DNA of 63,764 nucleotides, counting the filler, from Octopus bimaculoides (Eukaryota): assembly GCF_001194135.2 (NCBI RefSeq). It is 5 parts of 4 records of this genome, joined end to end, with 100 filler letters (N's around TTAATTAATTAA, not from the genome) between each part and the next. Parts side by side here need not be neighbours in the genome. Positions count along the whole stretch, not along the records: positions 1 to 25,073 come from NC_068982.1; 4 more parts are not named here. One strand, written 5' to 3'. The translations under genes were made by a program, and so were the position numbers. The number at the start of each line of letters is the position of its first letter. The first letter of the stretch is position 1. The notes under the pieces are model-generated. The model ran no database searches. It was not told the DNA's origin and was given only the letters and a program-made list of their open reading frames with translations. This document shows, in pieces, positions 5,281-19,803 of this stretch.

Positions 5281-6240
5281 TATTAGCCGTATACTTCATG
5301 CCTCTTTATTAATTTTACTAAATTTTCTCAAGTTGGAATGCTAGCTATAATAGCTAAACAAACTTCACATGCACAATCATACACACACGCACACACATGA
5401 ACGCGCACACACAGACACAGACAGACACAATTATACACACGCAAACACACACAAAATGCAACGATAATTTTACTGATCTAATCATTTGTAAATTTTCAAC
5501 TCTGTCGATGGGCGCAATTATACTAATAAAATATAATTACACACTTATATTTGCGCACAGATTTCTAATACAGTCTTTTATGTATCTTCTGCGGCTTATC
5601 TGCTATACAAATCAACCACAAAAACGTCAGAAATATCAGATATTTTTACTTTACAGACTGAAGATTTCTGAACATAGAAAAAAAATGGAATTGGAAAAAT
5701 ACATACATTGAAACTGTTAACTATTACAAACACATACACTTATAANNNNNNNNNNNNNNNNNNNNNNNNNNNNNNNNNNNNNNNNNNNNNNNNNNNNNNN
5801 NNNNNNNNNNNNNNNNNNNNNNNNNNNNNNNNNNNNNNNNNNNNNNNNNNNNNNNNNNNNNNNNNNNNNNNNNNNNNNNNNNNNNNNTATATATATATAT
5901 ACATATATATATATGCACATATGTATGTACACACACACACATATATATGTATATATATGTATGTCTGTGTGTATGTATATGACATTGATCATATATACTT
6001 TACGTATCGAGCATTTAAAGTTAGGCATCGGTGAAAAATATTGAATTGCGAAAAAAGAATCGTATACAAGAAGGCAATGAATTGATAGTTTCCAGATAGT
6101 AAGTCATTTAAAGATAAAATAAGTTCAAAAGAATGTCTGTGGATAGAAAAATAAATGAAAAAGAGAAAATAAATCAACAAAAACTTCGCAGATCACAGCT
6201 ATATGTTCAAACCCATACATACAAACATACATACATACAA

Positions 6241-9249: not shown

Positions 9250-10319
9250 CGTAGCTCACATCCATATCTGCTATTCCTATAAGGTTGAGCTTTTCTTATA
9301 ATTTCTACTTGGAGAGTTTAAATGTAGTCATGAAAATATATCCTTCTGGTGAAATGTAATTTCAGTAAATTTTTATATCTTTGTGCAGCTGAGTATTGCT
9401 CTGCATTTTACATTTGATGTAATGTTCACAATGCTTAATTAAATGGAGTCCCATGAAACGATCGTACTGCAATAACTTTGGATATCCTTGTGGCTTATTT
9501 TGATTATATATANNNNNNNNNNNNNNNNNNNNNNNNNNNNNNNNNNNNNNNNNNNNNNNNNNNNNNNNNNNNNNNNNNNNNNNNNNNNNNNNNNNNNNNN
9601 NNNNNNNNNNNNNNNNNNNNNNNNNNNNNNNNNNNNNNNNNNNNNNNNNNNNNNNNNNNNNNNNNNNNNNNNNNNNNNNNNNNNNNNNNNNNNNNNNNNN
9701 NNNNNNNNNNNNNNNNNNNNNNNNNNNNNNNNNNNNNNNNNNNNNNNNNNNNNNNNNNNNNNNNNNNNNNNNNNNNNNNNNNNNNNNNNNNNNNNNNNNN
9801 NNNNNNNNNNNNNNNNNNNNNNNNNNNNNNNNNNNNNNNNNNNNNNNNNNNNNNNNNNNNNNNNNNNNNNNNNNNNNNNNNNNNNNNNNNNNNNNNNNNN
9901 NNNNNNNNNNNNNNNNNNNNNNNNNNNNNNNNNNNNNNNNNNNNNNNNNNNNNNNNNNNNNNNNNNNNNNNNNNNNNNNNNNNNNNNNNNNNNNNNNNNN
10001 NNNNNNNNNNNNNNNNNNNNNNNNNNNNNNNNNNNNNNNNNNNNNNNNNNNNNNNNNNNNNNNNNNNNNNNNNNNNNNNNNNNNNNNNNNNNNNNNNNNN
10101 NNNNNNNNNNNNNNNNNNNNNNNNNNNNNNNNNNNNNNNNNNNNNNNNNNNNNNNNNNNNNNNNNNNNNNNNNNNNNNNNNNNNNNNNNNNNNNNNNNNN
10201 NNNNNNNNNNNNNNNNNNNNNNNNNNNNNNNNNNNNNNNNNNNNNNNNNNNNNNNNNNNNNNNNNNNNNNNNNNNNNNNNNNNNNNNNNNNNTATATATA
10301 TATATACATATATATATAT

Positions 10320-10350
<31 letters not shown>

Positions 10351-13300
10351 AGTGTGTATCTGTGTCTGTGTGCGTGTGCGCGCGTGTATTTACCTTTGGA
10401 AATGTAGACATACACAAGCATCGTACAGTAAAATTGGTTGTCTACAGTATTTAACCTGAAGTTTTACTCCAAATTGTAAGCAATGGCATCATATCTCTAA
10501 GAATTCCACTGGAAAAGTTAGAATAAATGAGTCAGATCGTGCTTGCCAAGCTTGGACTATTCTCATAAAACAAAGAATGAATTTCATTGTGACCCTGTCA
10601 GCTTCTGATAAACTATTTTTGCTTTATGCACTGACTTCCAGAGTAGAATCTGGTAGGGATGCAAGGACTCATGTCATTGAACATAGAGCATTTATCCTTA
10701 GTGTAATGACAATCTCCTAATGAGCAGAATGCAAGCTCTTATAAGCAATCCAATCTCCCCATTCCAGCAAGCTGCAAATCATCTTCGCTCCAAACAATTT
10801 TACCATTCGAAGTAGATGCGCACTAAGTGATATTCTAATAAGATCAATGCGTAGAGCTTTATGCAGCGCTAATCACAGGTTTACCATTCGTAGAATAACA
10901 TTGATATTTAGAAGCTGGATATGCGCTCAGGGCAAACGTCTGTAAGATGGCTACAGGAGAATCACAAATAATTATCATTTAAAAATGAAACCATCTGAAG
11001 CCATCTCTGAAAGACTAAATAAGTATTCCTGAAAGACTAAACAATCAATACTGAAAACGTGGAAACATGATGGTCTTCACACACTATGAAAGATTTATGC
11101 GTCTATGTAGGTGGCATAATGGGCCATCGAAGCTCGTTCTGCCAGGATTGATTTGATAAAAATAAGAAAGAAATTAAATGAAGTCTTTAAGAAAAAAAAA
11201 GAAGCTAACTATGCTACCTGCAGTTACACCCTCCCGGAGCAACAACAAAGCTCAGAGTAAAAAACTCATGATCTTTGAGTAAACGTGTTCTCTTCCAAGA
11301 AGAAAAAAGTATGGTGCATGAATAATGACTGAACTGGAGAAAAGCTTCGGAAGACACAAATTATGCACGAGCTTTCTTTGAATTCCTTTGTGAAATCTAT
11401 GGCTCCGCTACCTTGCAAGTTTCATTTCTTCTTACAGCAGATGGAGATATATCAAACACAAAGAAGGATTGCGTGGGAAATGGCTAAACGCATAAAATGT
11501 TCTGGACAGATATTCAAATTAAATTAAGAGGTGTTATAATCTTGTGCGGATTCTAATCTCCAAAACCACCTTGCATATATATAGGAAAACTATAATTGTC
11601 GCTAAATGTGACTAGGGTGCTAGAAACACCTAAATTGATAGAAATAGCACTCTAGTCACATTCAGTGATAATTATAGTCTTTTTTTTTTTTTTTGTAAAA
11701 CACTGATATAGACGTTTTTGGTTAAACATTAATATAGACTGCTGTCTATATTAATTTTCTGTATGTATGTATATATATATATGTATGTGTGTGTGTATGT
11801 GCGTGCGCGTGTGTGTGTATAACTCATATATACCATTCTAATTTTCTTAACAATAGTTGAACATAATTTTGTAGATATATTTTCAATGCTTATTATTTTG
11901 GGGATGTTAAATATTTGTCCTGCTTTTAACACAACTTGGATTTAGAGATTAAGTTTATTTTCCAAAATAATATGAAAATAATACGGCATAACCGCTTAAT
12001 AATACCAATACAGTCGTATTATTTTTCTTTTGAAGTTTGGAATAAAATAGATGACTTGAGTTGCTTGGGCTTCGTGTATTTTTCAATGATTGATAGTAAA
12101 AGCGGATCTGCAATTGATGCCTCACTTCACAATTTTCGTACATCATTGTTACTTCTTTGATTTTCTCATACATCTTTAAATATTCAGAATAAATTGTAGT
12201 CAAATGTGTTTTCTTGAACATAGAACAGAATATTCAGCTCGATTAGACAAATACGCCTAAATCATGAGAACCAGGTCATCCAGCAAAAATTCGTGCAACT
12301 AGTGAAAAGTAACAATGAAATTCTTAAACTGTAAAAGAAAAAAAATATTTGTGGAATTCTTTTGAAAAACTTTCTCTATTTTGAAACACAGAGATCTTGA
12401 TTCAAAATTTTGAGGTCATGCTCTGTGTTTTCATAAATCTAGTTCAGATGTTACATAAAAAAAAAACGGAAAAAGAAATCTGTCGTAGATTTAATATACG
12501 ATGTATAGGTGTAGTGAAATTACGTAACCTACTACACGACATTAATTCCTGAAATTGTATATCTGATATATATTAGATGATAAGCTGTTCTATCAGAAAG
12601 CTCTTACAATCACTGCTATACATGCGTACGTGTATGTGTATGCATGTGTATGTGTAAGTGAATGTGTATTTTTGTGTTTGCGTGTGTTTGTTATTGATAT
12701 ACAACTGATAGATATTAATAAATAATATATTTTACAGTTGAGAAACAAGAATCAGTGCTCTTTAACTTTTATTGTCTTCCGGTTACCATATATTATGACT
12801 TACAAGATAGTACATCTAGAGCAATGCTTACTGAGGTCCTTAATATATATATANNNNNNNNNNNNNNNNNNNNNNNNNNNNNNNNNNNNNNNNNNNNNNN
12901 NNNNNNNNNNNNNNNNNNNNNNNNNNNNNNNNNNNNNNNNNNNNNNNNNNNNNNNNNNNNNNNNNNNNNNNNNNNNNNNNNNNNNNNNNNNNNNNNNNNN
13001 NNNNNNNNNNNNNNNNNNNNNNNNNNNNNNNNNNNNNNNNNNNNNNNNNNNNNNNNNNNNNNNNNNNNNNNNNNNNNNNNNNNNNNNNNNNNNNNNNNNN
13101 NNNNNNNNNNNNNNNNNNNNNNNNNNNNNNNNNNNNNNNNNNNNNNNNNNNNNNNNNNNNNNNNNNNNNNNNNNNNNNNNNNNNNNNNNNNNNNNNNNNN
13201 NNNNNNNNNNNNNNNNNNNNNNNNNNNNNNNNNNNNNNNNNNNNNNNNNNNNNNNNNNNNNNNNNNNNNNNNNNNNNNNNNNNNNNNNNNNNNNNNNNNN

Positions 13301-13474: not shown

Positions 13475-14169
13475 TAGACGCATGGCACCACGAGTGCCGC
13501 CTTGCTCTCAAGCAACTCTGCCGTCCGTAACCAAACTTGTTCGACTTCAATTCCACGAAGGCGTTCTGTAGACGTTTAGTGGTGGCGAGGAGTAACGACG
13601 TTCTTGCAGAGAATCTGGGCGTGTACGGGAAACACCTGACCCGCCTATTCAGGATAGCTTTCGGGCCGGGACCTACGGACATTCACCAGAGATCCCAGGC
13701 CTGGCAATTCTGTCGGGAAGCATTGCCGGTTTGGAATAAGCTCCATATGCATGGTTCGAGATACACCCGACCGACTTGTCCGAAATGCGGTCAGAGCGAC
13801 GAAACCGTTCTGCACGCACTTGCGCAGTGTCCAACCATTTCAGACATGTGGGTTTATGTGGAACGGCTGCTGTTCCGTGTACATATTGCCTCGCCACCTT
13901 CCTTTAACCGAGAAGAGCAAGGCAGTTTTCATTCTACTGGTGGCTATGGTGAAAGAATGTGTGTGGTGGTCTCGTGCGAAAAGTTTAGAGACAAACACTT
14001 TCCTCTTTGGCCAATCGCTCATCAACTTGTTCAAGTTCTACTTGAAAAGGAAGGTGAGAATAGAGAGGGAAGTTTTGTCTCATAAAAGTTTCAATAAAAG
14101 GTGGGTGAATGTAGCAAAGATGGTTCGCGTAAATGACGAAACCACTTTAAACATGATCCTGTAAATCCA

Positions 14170-14204
<35 letters not shown>

Positions 14205-14447
14205 GCACTTTACTCTCATATCTTACTTTCCCTGCCTGAGGTTACCGTGGTCTTTTCCGTAGGCATTTCTTTCCACGTATAAACCTCTTTTATATTTTTA
14301 CGCCGCTTTTTTTTTGCTGTTTACACGTCACTAACACTTTCAATCCCTTTTGATCTTTTTTCCTTTTTTCTTTCTTTCTTTCGAAAAGAAAAGTTCTACC
14401 TTGTATTGTCCCCTCTGTGTTCGGCCCTGCGTGGCTAATATACAAAG
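13475..14447 (+). mobile_element. Tx1/L1-clade LINE, ORF2 C-terminus (zf-RVT) and 3' UTR
   Basis: ORF 13537..14085 has AWQFCREALPVWNKL...CPKCGQSDETVLHALAQCP (CCHC zf-RVT). It frameshifts into 13751..14164 (..KECVWWSR..RWVNVAKMV..), followed by a T-rich 3' UTR ending at (TATC)n. Confidence 0.85.
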
Positions 14448-14460
14448 ATATCTATCTATC

Positions 14461-14491
<31 letters not shown>

Positions 14492-14496
14492 CTATC
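14448..14496. repeat. (TATC)n microsatellite
   Basis: Read directly; abuts the LINE 3' end. Confidence 0.95.
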
Positions 14497-14701
14497 NNNN
14501 NNNNNNNNNNNNNNNNNNNNNNNNNNNNNNNNNNNNNNNNNNNNNNNNNNNNNNNNNNNNNNNNNNNNNNNNNNNNNNNNNNNNNNNNNNNNNNNNGCCA
14601 AATACTCTAATGCTACGGTCAAAGTGTATAATCGCTAAACCATTCATAGATTTCTATAGCGTAGATATATATGCTGAGAGTGATCGTCGTCCGGAATCAG
14701 C

Positions 14702-14773
14702 CGAGTCGGGCCGCTCCTGCTGAAGAGGCTACGGCAAAAGCCGAAACTGACCGCTCAGTCTGGGATTATCTCG
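14702..14773 (+). ncRNA. Type I hammerhead ribozyme, intact catalytic core
   Basis: Stem I TCCTG(14715-19)/TGGGA(14761-65), with 3 WC and 2 GU pairs; core CTGAAGA (14720-26); stem II GGCT/AGCC with loop ACGGCAAA; GAAA (14743-46); stem III CTGA-ccgc-TCAG; GTC site ending 14760; distal stem I CGAG/CTCG beyond an internal loop. Confidence 0.9.
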
Positions 14774-15026
14774 ACCGCTACTTCTCGGGCGATTACGGTC
14801 CCTGTCAGCATGTATATATACATTTATGGGCTTTGACTGCAGCATTATAGCGTTTAGCTCAACACCGTCAGTCATATTTAATGATGGTTATAGGTCTCCT
14901 TGGTAGACATTTGCTTCCCGCTGCCTATATACATTATTTGTATACACATTAGCGATTCGCTAAATCATCCACACATTTCTATGGCTTAGACATATGGGCT
15001 GAGAGTGATCGTCGTCTGGAATCAGA

Positions 15027-15098
15027 CGAGTCGGACCGATCCCACTAAAGTGGCTACGGCAAAAGCCAAAACTAACCGATCAGTCTGGGAATAACTCG
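15027..15098 (+). ncRNA. Type I hammerhead ribozyme, mutated core (probably inactive)
   Basis: Perfect stem I TCCCA/TGGGA and distal CGAGT/ACTCG; stem II identical to copy 1. Core reads CTAAAGT instead of CTGAAGA and AAAA instead of GAAA, and stem III has one mismatch. Confidence 0.8.
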
Positions 15099-15195
15099 AC
15101 CGCTTCTTGTATGTATACAATTAAGTGCTTCGACTGCAGCATTATAGCATTTAGGTCTTATTTTTAGCAATGTAGGTGTTTAGAACACCCTTAGT

Positions 15196-15234
<39 letters not shown>

Positions 15235-16439
15235 ATGTNNNNNNNNNNNNNNNNNNNNNNNNNNNNNNNNNNNNNNNNNNNNNNNNNNNNNNNNNNNNNN
15301 NNNNNNNNNNNNNNNNNNNNNNNNNNNNNNNNNNNNNNNNNNNNNNNNNNNNNNNNNNNNNNNNNNNNNNNNNNNNNNNNNNNNNNNNNNNNNNNNNNNN
15401 NNNNNNNNNNNNNNNNNNNNNNNNNNNNNNNNNNNNNNNNNNNNNNNNNNNNNNNNNNNNNNNNNNNNNNNNNNNNNNTGTGTGTGTGTGTGTGTGTGTG
15501 TGTGTGTTCGTGAAATTGGGTTCATTCACGCTAGTAATTCAATATATTGATTTTAAATCTTAACACAAGGCTGTCAGTTTGGGATATAAGCGCAGTCCAC
15601 ATGACAGAACCAGTGCTCAGTTGATGCTTCAAATAAGAACATCATTTGTCTCGTCAGTATTTGAAATAAGAACGTAATGTGATGCAACTAAAAACTGGAA
15701 AATAAATAAAGAAAGAAAGAAAACAATCTTGTTCTTCTAATTTTGCCAATGCACCAGTTGGGATATATTGATTTTTAACACAGGCAGAAACGTGATTTGC
15801 ACAGGAAAGGAAAGATAGGAAATCAGTGCAGACCTAATCATTAAGCTATGAAAATATAAAAGAATGATACTCAGAGGAAGTTGGACGTTTTTACCACGGT
15901 TAATGCATGGAATAATTAAGGGTTCTTTTACTTGCATCGGATTAAAATGCAGCCAATGTCAAATAGGCAGCAACCTTGGATGTACTGACTCAATTTACTC
16001 GGTCAGGTTTTCACGCATGCGTAGGTGAAATACTCTTGTGTATTTCATTTTTCATATGACATTTTCCTTTACTTTCATATGACATTTTCCTTTAATTTTA
16101 ACTATTATCTCATTAGATATGTTTAATTTACAACAAATTTATAACGGTGTCTTATTACAATACATAACGTCTTTATAACTCCAATGGTTCTCATATAACC
16201 TTTTTGTCTCTATTCACATGCTTATAAACCCCCAAATTTACGTTTTGTCAATTAATAGTATCATTAATGGTAAATATTGTTGTTGTTTTTCATATCTAAT
16301 ATTTTAAGGAAAAATAATAAAACCGAAACACTACAGTAACTTTTCAGGATCTCTGAGACTGGTAAGAGGAATTAAGGACATTACTTTCATCCGAAGTTTT
16401 GATGCGTGTGGATTTTACTAAAGGCATTCAAGTAAGAAA

Positions 16440-16650
16440 TATTCGATAGATTAAGTTCAACAGTGTGTGAATTGAAACGATTTCTACCAGTATTTACGCA
16501 ATTCTATTTAATAAATATAGCATGCAAGTGTTTGGTCGACTTGAGGCTATGACAGAAAATACTTAACCAAGTTCCTCTGCAATGGAATTGAACACAAAAC
16601 ACAACGTTTTGAAGTGAACCACTTGAACAAGCAATCGTGCCTACGTGCAC
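16440..16650 (-). mobile_element. SINE family B, old degenerate copy
   Basis: Reverse complement ttcaattccattgcagaggaacttggttaagtattttctgtcatagcctcaagtcgacc aligns by eye with the family B head/CORE-like region. Confidence 0.55.
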
Positions 16651-18158
16651 ACGGATTTCCCTTGCACTGCTGCAATATGTCACCTGAGGGTAACGAAGTA
16701 GGAGTCATTGTTTAAGTGACGTATTACTACCACATTGAGTTACTTGACGTCAAGTAAAACTGATCGACGCGGTTTTTTTTCTTCTGGCATCTACAAAATA
16801 TAGATACCGGCTTTATATTCTTTGTAAAACATTGACAATAAGTCACAGGCTAAGTTGTCGATTAGTATTTCATCAATATTCCCTAATTTTACTATATATT
16901 TATTTCTTATGCGTATTTTTGCCCCTGTCTTCTTCGCCTTATCATCATATGTATATATAAATATATATTCTATACCTCCTAATTCTCATGCTTTTTTCCA
17001 GATATCCAATGTCAACTTCTTAGATGGTATTAATTTCTTCTTTCTTTTCCAATATCTACAAGCGCCGAGCTCTCTCTTTTCTCCAGATACCAATACTTCT
17101 TCGTTCTGTCGATACTGATAATCGTTTGTATTGCCAAATGTAGAGCACATTTTGTTTATGCTATTTCAAAAGATTAATATTTTCATCTTTTGCTGAATAT
17201 CTTTTCGTTGTGGTTTCATTTTCATTTATTTTTATGTATGTCACTTTGCTGAGTCATACTACTTTGGATTAGCATTGCTTTTATACTGTGCCTGCAGCGG
17301 ATGGTGCACTTTCTAATAAAATTACAGTGCTTAGAGATCCAGATTACTGTAAATCAATTTCTATCAGTGTTTCCCGGAATGTGTTTGAGTTTCCACAATT
17401 ACAAATGGCGCTTTATTAAGACATCATACCAAAAGAGGACGAAAGATATAGTATTACGTAAAATTACATTATCATACTAAACTACATCTGATTACGCGGG
17501 ATACACCCTGATAACTTGCAATTAACTGTTGCTTTATATTGATATCAGTCATATTTGATTTTTTTTTCTTATGTATATTACTGTAATTACAAGTTAGAAA
17601 TACTTTGTTTTATGGTTCATTAAAACTCAAGTGTAGAATGTACAATGAACTTGATACTGAATTATAATTTCTCATTATACATTATTTCCCCTTTCATTTT
17701 CACTGTTCATTTTCTGTAACAAAGAGAATGGTGCTGCGGGAAATAATATCAACACACATGTAAATAGTTCTATATCTTAAAGAGAACGCAAAACCAAATA
17801 TCTTAATATTTCCATTGGGATACACTTATGAAAGGGTGGATTTGATACGAATTTCCATAAGAGATTGGAGAATGGGCACAGAATATGACCTCATATTATG
17901 GAGATAGTAAGTATCTTGTATTTTCTAAAATGTAATGATGATGGCTACTCAGAATTTATCACCGTATTTCATAGTTTGGATGTACATGGGAAATTACTAA
18001 GAAATAAATGTACAAGTAAACAATTTTTGTTAAGAATTTTCGGCTTCGATCCCAATATTTGTCCCCAATAGAGAAGCCTCAGATTTGAACATAGTAGTTA
18101 AAAAACAAAAGAAAAAAAACGATGCTTTTCATAGGAAATCGAGCTGCTTAAAACTTAC

Positions 18159-18230
18159 CTCGCCACAGTCGCAGTCAGAAATGTAATGAAATACTGATCG
18201 ATGCATTGGATACTTGTACCAAATACACCT
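18159..18230 (-). CDS. Candidate 72-nt internal exon, product unassigned
   Basis: Minus-strand acceptor cttatattgcag| and donor GCGAG|gtaagt. Length is a multiple of 3, with two open frames (GVFGTSIQCIDQYFITFLTATVA; RCIWYKYPMHRSVFHYISDCDCGE). No recognisable motif. Confidence 0.25.
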
Positions 18231-18774
18231 CTGCAATATAAGCTACACACACACGCACACATGTGTGCGTAATTCTGTGTGAGCAGGATCGCTCATATAA
18301 CATTTAACTGTAACTGTATTCCTGAGTATGGGAATTGACTATCTCTCAATAAACTACCGTAAATCTGTAATATTCTTGAATTATATTCTTTACCCATATA
18401 TGATATATCCCTTTGTGATATATTAATTTATTTCTTTTGTAAGAATACTTTGATCTTCAAAAACATTTCTGTCTTAACTTCATGCCATAGAGTTTTCACT
18501 CAGTAAGACGCTGCCAACAGATCAACGACTTTCTAACTTTCCTGAGATTATTTATATCATAATTTGCATTGACATTGCCTTTCCATTTCGTTATTGGGTT
18601 CGATTTACGATTATCAGATAACTTTCTTTAAACTGCTGTCTTCCTTTTTCACACAAATATGTATTACTTTAGCATCTCTGGAAATTCAGAAGGCGTCTTC
18701 TATAAAACTTTTTACGTAGTTCATGTTCTTTTTCATGCTCATAAAAGTTATTATCACCGACACTCCTCCCACAC

Positions 18775-18789
18775 CACCACCACTACCAC

Positions 18790-18820
<31 letters not shown>

Positions 18821-19222
18821 GCCACTGCCGCAACTGCACCACAACCATCATTCCCTTCATCTCTTCCTGCTTCTCATCTGGTGGTCATTGTGATGGTGCC
18901 GCGTTCGCTGCCGCGTCCGCTGCTGCGTTCGCTGCCGCAGCTGCCGTCCTTTTCCCCGTTGGCGCGGCTACCATCCCCATTGCCGTGGTTGCTGCGACCA
19001 ACACAGGCGCTATTGTCATCGATGCAGCAGCCTGTGCGGCCGCTGCTGCTTCCACCTCTGCCGCCGCTGCTTCCCTCGCTACTACTCCCTGCTGCCGATA
19101 CCACTGGTGCTGCTTCTGCTGACGCCACCGCTTCCACCACTGATGCTACCAGTGCTGCCATCAGTGCTGCCACCAGTGCTGTCACCGCCTCTGAGGCCGC
19201 CGCCGCCTCTGATGCCGCCGCT
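18775..19222. repeat. (CAT)n followed by a GC-rich GCC/GCT low-complexity tract
   Basis: Read directly; includes repeated gcgttcgctgccgc units and gives Pro/Leu/Ala-rich translations. Confidence 0.85.
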
Positions 19223-19402
19223 TTAGTGAATCGAAAAGGAGTGATGTTTCATCAGGACAATGCGCGACCCCACACTGCAAAGATCACATCACAGAACATC
19301 AAAGAGGTTGGTTGGGAAAAAATTCCTAATCCACCTTATTCTTTCGACCTTGCTCTTTCAGACTACCATTTGCTTCGTAGTTTACAGAATCATTTGGGGA
19401 CA
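19222..19402 (+). mobile_element. Mariner (DD34D) transposase C-terminal fragment
   Basis: LVNRKGVMFHQDNARPHTAKIT...GWEKIPNPPYSFDLALSDYHLLRSLQNHL matches the mariner HDNARPH and YSPDLAPSDY motifs. Confidence 0.92.
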
Positions 19403-19409
19403 TAACTAT

Positions 19410-19803
19410 GAAGTAGCTTTGACTATGATCCAGCAGTTCATTATGCTCATGACATTAGTGTTTCCATTGGTGCAATGACAACTGAGTGCATCCACTGTAA
19501 AGCAAGGAAGTGGCCTGGAGAGACATCGGAACTGTGCTGCAGTGGTGGAAAGGTTAATGTCCCTGCAATCCCCCAACCTCCAGAGTCATTGAAGGTACAG
19601 TTGTCATCAACTGACCAAGATTCCAAACACTTCTAAAACAAAATTAGACAATACAACGTCTCACTACAGATGACATCATTTGGACCCACAAGAGATTTAA
19701 CTGAGTCAGGATTAATGCAAACTGTTAGGATCCAAGGTCAGATTTATCATTGGATTAGCTCTCTACTACCTCTGTCAAATGAATCACCAAAATCGGCCTT
19801 TTA
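19410..19803 (+). mobile_element. Helitron RepHel N-terminal fragment (pseudogene)
   Basis: FDYDPAVHY..VSIGAMTTECIHCKARKWPGETSELCCSGGKVNVP..PPESL..SKHF*NKIRQYNVSLQMTSFG..GLMQTVRIQGQIYHWISSLLP is the characteristic C2C2 region and QMTSFG/QGQIYH motifs upstream of the Helitron Rep domain. One in-frame stop. Confidence 0.88.

What the first reader, a model, noticed from the sequence alone, without database searches (positions are those of the whole stretch)
14632..15153. Tandem 325-nt repeat with a canonical type I hammerhead ribozyme: candidate cephalopod non-LTR retrozyme / circRNA
Seen: two units exactly 325 nt apart, each with a full hammerhead fold. Copy 1 has an intact CUGAAGA..GAAA..GUC core; copy 2 has perfect stems but core mutations (G5A, A9U, G12A). 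The two copies combine to a perfect consensus, TCCCA CTGAAGA GGCT ACGGCAAA AGCC GAAA CTGA CCGN TCAG TC TGGGA. Established: non-LTR retrozymes are short (about 170-400 nt) non-coding tandem repeats with type I hammerheads that self-process into linear and circular monomers; they are reported from corals, mussel and axolotl and are proposed to be mobilised by Penelope-type RTs. Inference: this is a locus of such a family in an octopus genome. The monomer would be 14761-15085, but the dead second core suggests this particular copy is a fossil or cleaves only once. I do not know whether the family has already been described.
Basis: partly seen in the sequence, partly recalled or inferred. Interest (0 to 1): 0.88.

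Follow-up and report, generated by a model that had tools for sequence, protein, structure and literature searches.

The report
Decayed hammerhead-ribozyme tandem repeat (retrozyme-like)
A short non-coding DNA repeat carries one intact and one mutated copy of a self-cutting RNA motif; it looks like a worn-out insertion of a 'retrozyme', a kind of small mobile element already known from many animals, so it is a new example rather than a new kind of thing.

Summary
Two head-to-tail units lie 325 nt apart (14632-14956; 14957 to about 15203) and are 85% identical. Unit 1 carries a complete type I hammerhead: core 14720-14726 and 14743-14745, and cleavage after C14760. Helices I/II/III are 5/4/5 bp. 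The hammerhead sits at the tip of a 150-nt hairpin (z = -4.75). A hammerhead descriptor finds only this site in the window. It matched once in 3000 shuffled windows at these stem lengths, and it recovers experimentally validated coral and mussel retrozyme ribozymes.

There is no ORF with homologues. No RT or GIY-YIG endonuclease is detectable within about 3 kb on either side, and GC is 44%. Every locus-level feature fits a non-LTR retrozyme. By the "two complete ribozymes" criterion the locus is inactive.

Rfam does not call the motif at gathering score. Copy number, expression, circular RNA and the source organism could not be tested, because no eukaryotic genome or RNA-seq data were available.

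Verdict: a probable fossil copy of an undescribed family of a known class. Interest is modest.

The parts
14632..14956 (+). Repeat unit 1 (325 nt), complete
   Evidence: Direct repeat family D1/D2, spacing 325; alignment. The left flank 14597-14629 is not similar to the tail of the unit.
14957..15203 (+). Repeat unit 2, partial and rearranged. It has a ~28-nt deletion relative to 14784-14811 and a ~25-nt internal duplication (15166-15203 aligns to 14841-14880). It then runs into a microsatellite and a gap.
14715..14765 (+). Intact type I hammerhead. Helix I 14715-14719/14761-14765. C3-A9 CUGAAGA 14720-14726. Helix II 14727-14730/14739-14742 with loop 2 at 14731-14738. G12-A14 14743-14745. Helix III 14746-14750/14755-14759 with loop CCGC 14751-14754. 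C17 = 14760; predicted cleavage between 14760 and 14761.
   Evidence: Sequence. Only descriptor hit in the window, with 1 hit in 3000 shuffles at these stem lengths. Rfam sub-threshold alignments. Energy of the hammerhead fold is -10.2 kcal/mol, comparable to the validated coral ribozyme.
14666..14816 (+). Long imperfect hairpin with the hammerhead at its apex; it is an extension of helix I. After the 5-bp inner helix I come a 4x4 internal loop (14711-14714 / 14766-14769), a 6-bp outer stem (14705-14710 / 14770-14775), and further pairing out to 14666/14816.
   Evidence: MFE -67.3 kcal/mol, z = -4.75, 0 of 200 shuffles as stable. With the hammerhead helices enforced the outer stem is retained, -61.1 kcal/mol.
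15040..15090 (+). Dead hammerhead of unit 2: G5A (15047), A9U (15051), G12A (15068, at a CpG), helix III G>A giving an A·C mismatch (15074). Helix I (UCCCA/UGGGA) and helix II are intact.
   Evidence: no Rfam match at E <= 10
14761..15085 (+). Notional 325-nt monomer between the two C17 positions. It would be released only if both ribozymes cut, and the second cannot.
   Evidence: Circular fold: MFE -86 kcal/mol, 62% paired, z = -2.15 (10 of 300 shuffles as stable); GC 44%
15196..15238 (.). (TA)n(TG)n microsatellite that ends the contig at the gap 15239-15478. It hides the right end of the array.

Best explanation
This is an old, decayed genomic insertion of a small non-coding, hammerhead-bearing tandem repeat of the non-LTR retrozyme kind.

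How a live copy would work (mechanism taken from PMC7229834, inferred here):
1. A multimeric transcript is made.
2. Each type I hammerhead folds. Helix I is closed by the sequences that flank the ribozyme.
3. Each ribozyme cuts after its GUC. [quoted passage not shown]
4. A host tRNA-type ligase circularises the monomers.
5. A Penelope-like reverse transcriptase copies the circle round and round into tandem cDNA, which integrates.

At this locus only ribozyme 1 is intact. Ribozyme 2 has lost G5, A9 and G12. From mutational and structural work on the hammerhead, the first and last of these are individually incompatible with catalysis. A transcript would therefore be cut once, after C14760, and could not release a monomer, unless an intact unit is hidden in the downstream assembly gap.

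Shown here: the repeat, the intact and the mutated motif, the long hairpin, the lack of coding capacity, and the absence of an adjacent RT or endonuclease.
Inferred: transcription, cleavage, circularisation, mobilisation, and membership of a multi-copy family.
For: - Repeat of 325-nt period at 85% identity.
- Complete type I hammerhead with 5/4/5-bp helices. It is the only descriptor hit in 25 kb on both strands; shuffles give 29 hits in 3000 at minimal stems and 1 in 3000 at the observed stems.
- The same descriptor recovers the experimentally cleaving coral and mussel retrozyme ribozymes, and the axolotl one when helix III is relaxed.
- Helix II of 4 bp, and helix I of 5 bp up to an internal loop, is the geometry of natural tertiary-stabilised hammerheads (established knowledge).
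- Helix III (5 bp plus tetraloop) is stronger than in the validated mussel and axolotl ribozymes.
- The hammerhead fold energy is -10.2 kcal/mol against an MFE of -16.4. Validated coral (-11.6/-15.2) and mussel (-5.7/-13.1) show the same relation.
- The ribozyme caps a 150-nt hairpin with z = -4.75. The monomer circle has z = -2.15.
- GC is 44-45%.
- No ORF longer than 59 aa, no Pfam hit and no homologue.
- No RT or GIY-YIG in ORF fragments of 10293-12853, 13475-14496 or 15479-18600. The only RT remnant is a LINE-type zf-RVT tail.
- The two helix I differences between the units (U>C, G>A) both keep pairing with the unchanged UGGGA strand.
- The literature definition and size range (150-450 bp; mussel 350-390 bp) fit (PMC7229834).
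Against: - No second copy could be found anywhere, so a family is not demonstrated.
- Rfam does not call the motif at gathering score.
- The two units are as diverged inside the ribozyme (13.7%) as outside it (15.2%), so nothing shows selection on the motif at this locus.
- Only about 1.6-1.8 units are present, and only one ribozyme is complete. The operational criterion for an active retrozyme, at least two consecutive complete hammerheads (bioRxiv 10.64898/2026.07.22.740005), is not met.
- At genome scale (gigabases), a chance rate of about 3e-4 per 23 kb would give tens of chance motifs. The motif alone is therefore not proof. The repeat and the hairpin context carry the argument.
Confidence: 0.72

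Rival explanations
1. It is a fragment of the pseudo-LTR region of a Penelope-like element, or a partial tandem of such termini, rather than a stand-alone non-autonomous unit. The coding part would be deleted or hidden in the assembly gaps.
For: - Penelope-like elements carry type I hammerheads in their pLTRs and insert as partial tandems, often into microsatellites such as (TA)n (PMC8557442).
- This array abuts (TA)n(TG)n and gaps.
- Xenopus retrozymes are sequence relatives of pLTRs.
- Octopus genomes hold Penelope families (PMC13282606).
Against: - The units are directly adjacent at 325-nt spacing with no ORF between them.
- No RT or GIY-YIG signal within about 3 kb on either side.
- The hammerheads described for PLEs are minimal variants with little or no helix III that act as dimers (PMC7761336). 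Here helix III is 5 bp with a tetraloop.
- The stated gap sizes (100 and 240 nt) are too small for a PLE ORF, although gap sizes in scaffolds are only estimates.
Confidence: 0.12
2. It is a dispersed SINE-like or otherwise solitary hammerhead-bearing element, in the manner of the Schistosoma Sm-alpha repeats. It was duplicated locally by replication slippage or unequal exchange, so the tandem arrangement is incidental and no circular RNA intermediate is involved.
For: - Fewer than two units are present.
- The units differ by indels, including a local 25-nt duplication that shows the region is prone to slippage.
- Monomeric 'solo' copies are common in retrozyme families.
Against: - No tRNA-, 5S- or snRNA-like head is detected by Rfam or ARAGORN.
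- No convincing Pol III boxes.
- No A-rich or simple-repeat tail between the units.
- The junction between the units is seamless at 14956/14957, as expected from a continuous template.
Confidence: 0.1
3. It is a chance hammerhead-like motif inside an ordinary local duplication, with no ribozyme biology.
For: - Sub-threshold Rfam scores.
- No conservation excess of the motif between the units.
- The scan that found it looked at many windows, and the descriptor's chance rate is not zero.
Against: - All 11 invariant core positions, three uninterrupted helices and a permitted cleavage triplet (GUC) are present together.
- Chance gives 1 hit in 3000 shuffled windows.
- Independently, the motif lies exactly at the apex of a 150-nt hairpin with z = -4.75.
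- It also lies inside a repeat of the size typical for retrozymes.
Confidence: 0.04

Closest known systems
Metazoan non-LTR retrozymes (Cervera & de la Peña 2020, PMC7229834), e.g. the Mytilus galloprovincialis 350-390-bp repeats and the Acropora millepora 220-240-bp repeats
   Same: - Head-to-tail non-coding repeats of a few hundred bp.
- One canonical type I hammerhead per unit.
- GC below 50%.
- Self-paired monomer.
- No LTRs.
   Different: - No sequence similarity to the coral, mussel or axolotl units beyond the catalytic core.
- Helix III is longer (5 bp) and loop 2 is 8 nt.
- Only about 1.6-1.8 units here, and the second ribozyme is inactivated.
- Copy number, transcription and circular RNA are not shown.
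[quoted passage not shown]
   Same: - Type I topology.
- Tandem arrangement.
- Association with microsatellite-rich sites.
- These elements are the proposed source and mobiliser of retrozymes.
   Different: - PLE hammerheads are minimal, with helix III nearly absent, and act as dimers. Here helix III is stable.
- No RT or GIY-YIG ORF is nearby.
Classical hammerhead-bearing satellite or SINE-like repeats: newt satellite 2 (~330 bp), Schistosoma Sm-alpha, cave-cricket pDo500
   Same: - Similar unit length.
- Type I hammerhead.
- Tandem genomic repeats transcribed into self-cleaving RNAs. The field now treats these as retrozymes.
   Different: - Newt and axolotl ribozymes have a 2-bp helix III and need dimers. 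This one should fold as a monomer.
- Those are high-copy arrays. Here only a short decayed array is seen.
Rfam Hammerhead_1 hits annotated in the giant squid genome (235 loci, PMC6962438)
   Same: Type I hammerheads in a cephalopod genome, if the window is indeed cephalopod.
   Different: This motif does not reach the gathering score of any Rfam hammerhead model, so it would not have been counted by such an annotation. The squid hits were not analysed as repeats or retrozymes.

Membership tests
Non-LTR retrozyme | Type I hammerhead with a complete catalytic core (CUGANGA / GAAA / RUH) and three helices | tested here: met
   Unit 1, 14715-14765: stems of 5/4/5 bp and GUC at the cleavage site. 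The descriptor was validated on the coral and mussel ribozymes.
Non-LTR retrozyme | Head-to-tail repeats of about 150-450 bp, each carrying the ribozyme | tested here: met
   Period 325 nt, about 1.6-1.8 units, seamless junction at 14956/14957
Non-LTR retrozyme | [quoted passage not shown] | tested here: not met
   Unit 2 has G5A, A9U, G12A and a helix III mismatch and no Rfam match at E <= 10. An intact unit hidden in the gap cannot be excluded.
Non-LTR retrozyme | Non-coding: no ORF of known function and no LTRs | tested here: met
   Longest ORF is 59 aa, with no Pfam hit and no homologue. PBS and PPT motifs were not specifically searched.
Non-LTR retrozyme | GC content below 50% | tested here: met
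   44.3% for the monomer and 45.4% for the array
Non-LTR retrozyme | Monomer RNA predicted to be stable and highly self-paired, with the hammerhead free to fold | tested here: inconclusive
   - Circle: 62% paired, z = -2.15.
- The ribozyme-bearing hairpin is strongly structured, z = -4.75.
- The monomer tested is a chimera of two diverged units.
Non-LTR retrozyme | Multi-copy family in the genome, with arrays of variable length | not testable with these tools
   No eukaryotic genome collection was available. There is no other copy in the 25-kb window, and all external searches were empty.
Non-LTR retrozyme | Self-cleavage, and accumulation of linear and circular monomer RNA | not testable with these tools
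   Needs in vitro transcription, a northern blot or RNA-seq.
Non-LTR retrozyme | Co-occurrence with autonomous Penelope-like elements in the same genome | not testable with these tools
   No PLE in the window. Octopus and squid genomes do hold PLEs (PMC13282606, PMC6962438), but the source organism could not be verified.
Penelope-like element (pLTR) | Repeats flank or adjoin an ORF encoding RT plus GIY-YIG endonuclease | tested here: not met
   The units are adjacent with no ORF between them. Pfam finds no RT or GIY-YIG in ORF fragments within about 3 kb on either side. The upstream zf-RVT (13537-14085) is LINE-type.
Penelope-like element (pLTR) | Minimal type I hammerhead with vestigial helix III | tested here: not met
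   Helix III is 5 bp plus a tetraloop
Rfam hammerhead clan CL00010 (Hammerhead_1, _3, HH9, HH10, II) | Score at or above the family's gathering threshold | tested here: not met
   The best clan member is Hammerhead_3 at 24.3 bits against a gathering score of 48.5, as a permuted alignment. The others score lower and are hidden by clan competition.

The most novel reading that the evidence does not exclude
The unit belongs to a still-active, so far undescribed retrozyme family of cephalopods. The family would be transcribed into abundant ~325-nt circular RNAs whose ~50-bp helix I extension is near-perfect double-stranded RNA. In animals with exceptionally strong ADAR editing, such circles would be prime editing substrates. 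Edited circles copied back into DNA would leave an A-to-G trail in genomic copies. That would give a heritable record of RNA editing and a ribozyme-based route to circular RNA in cephalopod tissues.
Probability: 0.15. Interest if true: 0.6.

Novelty: new member of a known kind. Interest (0 to 1): 0.33.

Why it matters
If genome and RNA data confirm it, it would add cephalopods to the animals that carry hammerhead retrozymes. It would also supply a ribozyme with an unusually stable helix III, which should cut as a monomer.

It shows that Rfam-based annotation misses such motifs, so published counts of hammerheads in cephalopod genomes are lower bounds.

The locus itself is a fossil and has no evident function. 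Its value is as a seed sequence for finding the family, not as a discovery in its own right.

Tried and rejected
- **Rfam at gathering score, whole piece:** nothing. Restricting the search to the type I register did not bring out Hammerhead_1, because clan competition keeps only the best member.
- **Type III reading suggested by the Hammerhead_3 alignment** (cleavage after GUC at 14707): rejected. Its helices I and III are full of non-pairs, whereas the type I reading has three clean helices.
- **Finding more copies through protein space:** the 59-aa ORF across the ribozyme was searched with the word index and with full HMMER over 1.84 billion representatives. A six-frame concatenate of the whole array was also searched. 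No true hit.
- **The best HMMER hit, P0001:** I fetched it (L001). It is an ORF read through an unrelated 119-nt satellite with no hammerhead. Rejected as chance.
- **Exact-pattern DNA scans:** two of metagenome contigs, one of viral contigs and one of prokaryote genomes. All empty.
- **Identifying the organism:** exact look-up of window ORFs and a homologue search with the LINE ORF returned nothing. The claim 'octopus' remains unverified.
- **TRF** did not report the 325-nt repeat, because there are too few units and they contain indels. The repeat finder did report it.
- **Target-site duplications:** not assessable, because the right end is lost in a microsatellite and a gap.
- **Pol III A and B boxes:** only 1-2-mismatch noise.
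- **tRNA-like head:** none.
- **Second ribozyme on the minus strand or elsewhere in the window,** including minimal PLE-type hammerheads: none.
- **Similarity to the validated coral, mussel and axolotl retrozymes:** none beyond the core.

Full report
**Setting.** The finding lies in a 642-bp contig (14597-15238) bounded by runs of N at 14497-14596 and 15239-15478. The window is AT-rich, full of microsatellites, and has eight assembly gaps. It reads like a short-read scaffold of an animal genome. I could not verify that it is from an octopus. Exact look-ups of window ORFs and a homologue search with the neighbouring LINE ORF returned nothing.

**The repeat.** The repeat finder gives 14632-14783 vs 14957-15108 at 85% identity, spacing 325. 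It also gives 14811-14860 vs 15108-15157 at 86%, spacing 297, so unit 2 lacks about 28 nt.
- A local alignment shows that unit 2 continues. 15166-15203 aligns to 14841-14880 after a ~25-nt internal duplication. It then runs into (TA)n(TG)n and the gap.
- The 33 nt to the left of the array are unrelated to the tail of the unit. The array therefore starts near 14630, and its right end is unknown.
- There are about 1.6-1.8 units. No other copy exists in the window.

**The ribozyme.** Unit 1 reads 5'-UCCUG CUGAAGA GGCU ACGGCAAA AGCC GAA ACUGA CCGC UCAGU C UGGGA-3' (14715-14765). Every invariant position of the hammerhead core is present: C3 U4 G5 A6 N7 G8 A9, G12 A13 A14, A15.1-U16.1 and C17.
- Helix II starts with the usual G10.1-C11.1 pair and is 4 bp long.
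- Helix III is 5 bp with a tetraloop.
- Helix I is open, which makes this type I. It is 5 bp (two of them G·U), followed by a 4x4 internal loop and a 6-bp outer stem.
- I wrote a type I descriptor. It hits only this site on either strand of the window.
- In 3000 dinucleotide-preserving shuffles of the window it hit 29 times at minimal stem lengths and once at the observed lengths.
- The same descriptor finds the experimentally cleaving coral and mussel retrozyme ribozymes, and the axolotl one when helix III is relaxed to 2 bp. Those sequences come from the supplement of PMC7229834.

**Rfam.** Rfam is not supportive at its curated thresholds, with no hit at gathering score. At E-value threshold the best clan member is a circularly permuted Hammerhead_3 alignment (24.3 bits, E = 0.009). 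The RAGATH-1 hammerhead model aligns in the type I register, including GUC and helix I, at 12.9 bits. I reject the type III reading because its helices I and III are mostly non-pairs.

**Fold energy.** The thermodynamic MFE of the isolated 55-mer is not the catalytic fold: -16.4 against -10.2 kcal/mol for the hammerhead fold. The same is true of the validated coral (-15.2 / -11.6) and mussel (-13.1 / -5.7) ribozymes. This is therefore not evidence against activity.

**Structural context.** 14664-14816 folds into one long imperfect hairpin with the hammerhead at its apex. The MFE is -67.3 kcal/mol, z = -4.75, and none of 200 shuffles is as stable. With the hammerhead helices enforced the outer stem persists at -61.1 kcal/mol. 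The notional circular monomer 14761-15085 is 62% paired with z = -2.15 and GC of 44%. The 28-nt deletion in unit 2 removes part of the 3' strand of this long stem.

**Unit 2.** At +325 the motif has G5A (15047), A9U (15051) and G12A (15068, a CpG site). A G>A change at 15074 puts an A·C mismatch in helix III.
- Helix I differs at two positions (U>C, G>A) on the 5' strand only. Both changes keep pairing with the unchanged UGGGA strand.
- From established mutational and structural work on the hammerhead, G12 (general base) and G5 are indispensable. Unit 2 is therefore dead.
- Rfam finds nothing there even at E <= 10.
- The units differ at 30 of 202 aligned sites: 13.7% inside the ribozyme against 15.2% outside. 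This is neutral decay with no sign of constraint at this locus.
- The JC distance between the units is about 0.166. Suppose both arose in one insertion, the host is an octopus, and the calibration quoted in PMC13282606 holds (JC 0.09 about 25 My, 0.2 about 56 My). The insertion would then be roughly 20-25 My old. This is a rough inference only.

**Coding capacity and neighbours.**
- The longest ORF across the array is 59 aa. It has no Pfam hit and no homologue.
- Upstream, 13537-14085 encodes the zf-RVT tail of a LINE-type reverse transcriptase (PF13966, E = 1.4e-6). That is not a Penelope-type protein.
- ORF fragments of at least 45 aa from 10293-12853, 13475-14496 and 15479-18600 show no RT or GIY-YIG domain.
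- The two units are directly adjacent.
A deleted or gap-hidden coding part cannot be strictly excluded.

**What it is.** Each locus-level feature in the definition of metazoan non-LTR retrozymes is met. Those features are a canonical type I hammerhead, head-to-tail non-coding repeats of 150-450 bp, GC below 50% and no LTRs. The self-paired-monomer feature is only weakly supported for the circle itself. The operational criterion for an active element, two consecutive complete hammerheads, is not met. I therefore read the locus as a fossil insertion of such an element.

The mechanism for live copies is taken from PMC7229834 and the recent preprint 10.64898/2026.07.22.740005, not shown here. It runs: transcription, self-cleavage, ligation to a circle by a host ligase, then rolling-circle reverse transcription by a Penelope-like RT. 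A transcript of this locus would be cut once, after C14760.

**What could not be done.** No eukaryotic genome or RNA-seq collection was available. I looked for further copies in four ways: through spurious ORFs in the protein collections, and through exact-pattern scans of metagenome, viral and prokaryote contigs. All were empty. The one marginal HMMER hit turned out to be an unrelated 119-nt satellite without a ribozyme. Family size, conservation of the core across copies, expression and circularity remain untested.

**Novelty.**
- Retrozymes are described for cnidarians, a mussel and amphibians. By bioinformatics they are also reported for rotifers, flatworms, annelids, crustaceans and insects.
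- A 2026 preprint ties them to Penelope pLTRs in vertebrates.
- Searches of the library found no paper describing them in cephalopods. Neither the retrozyme paper nor its supplement mentions cephalopods. The 2026 repeat annotation of O. vulgaris mentions neither ribozymes nor retrozymes.
- However, 235 Rfam Hammerhead_1 hits were listed for the giant squid.

This is a new member of a known kind, seen here as a decayed copy, and its interest is modest.

Noticed in passing
window 13537-14085 (+), with (AGAC)n at 14170-14204: C-terminal remnant of a LINE-type reverse transcriptase (Pfam zf-RVT, E = 1.4e-6), followed by a tetranucleotide tract that may be its 3' tail. No homologue was found in the protein collection.
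   Followed up: partly
window 19228-19405 (+): The end of ORF 18659-19405 reads ...VMFHQDNARPHTAKIT...PPYSFDLALSDYHLLRSLQNHL. By eye this is the C-terminal catalytic region of a mariner/Tc1 transposase. It is fused in frame to low-complexity Pro/Ala/Ser-rich sequence built from 12- and 18-nt repeats (18897-19221). Pfam gave no hit on the 63-aa piece.
   Followed up: partly
window 19440-19650 (+): Cys-rich stretch ...CIHCKARKWPGETSELCCSGGKVNVP.... From memory it resembles the N-terminal region of Helitron-type Rep/helicase proteins. No Pfam hit.
   Followed up: partly
window 14632-14956 vs the rest of the window: CpG observed/expected is 1.19 in the repeat unit against 0.80 in the rest of the window. 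The unit is unusually CpG-rich for its surroundings even though it looks old.
   Followed up: no
window gaps at 5746, 6794, 9513, 12854, 14497, 15239, 22987, 23760: There are eight N gaps in 25 kb. Several of them, including 6794, 15239 and 22987, are directly flanked by TA, TG or similar microsatellites, so contig ends are set by simple repeats. Array ends and insertion sites near them cannot be trusted.
   Followed up: no
L001 2987-4228 (ENA ERZ25069853 ctg27604l): A 119-nt tandem satellite (more than 10 units) has been called as a 432-aa 'protein' that cycles through all three frames. It surfaced as a chance hit to the translated ribozyme region. It has no hammerhead and no Rfam hit.
   Followed up: yes
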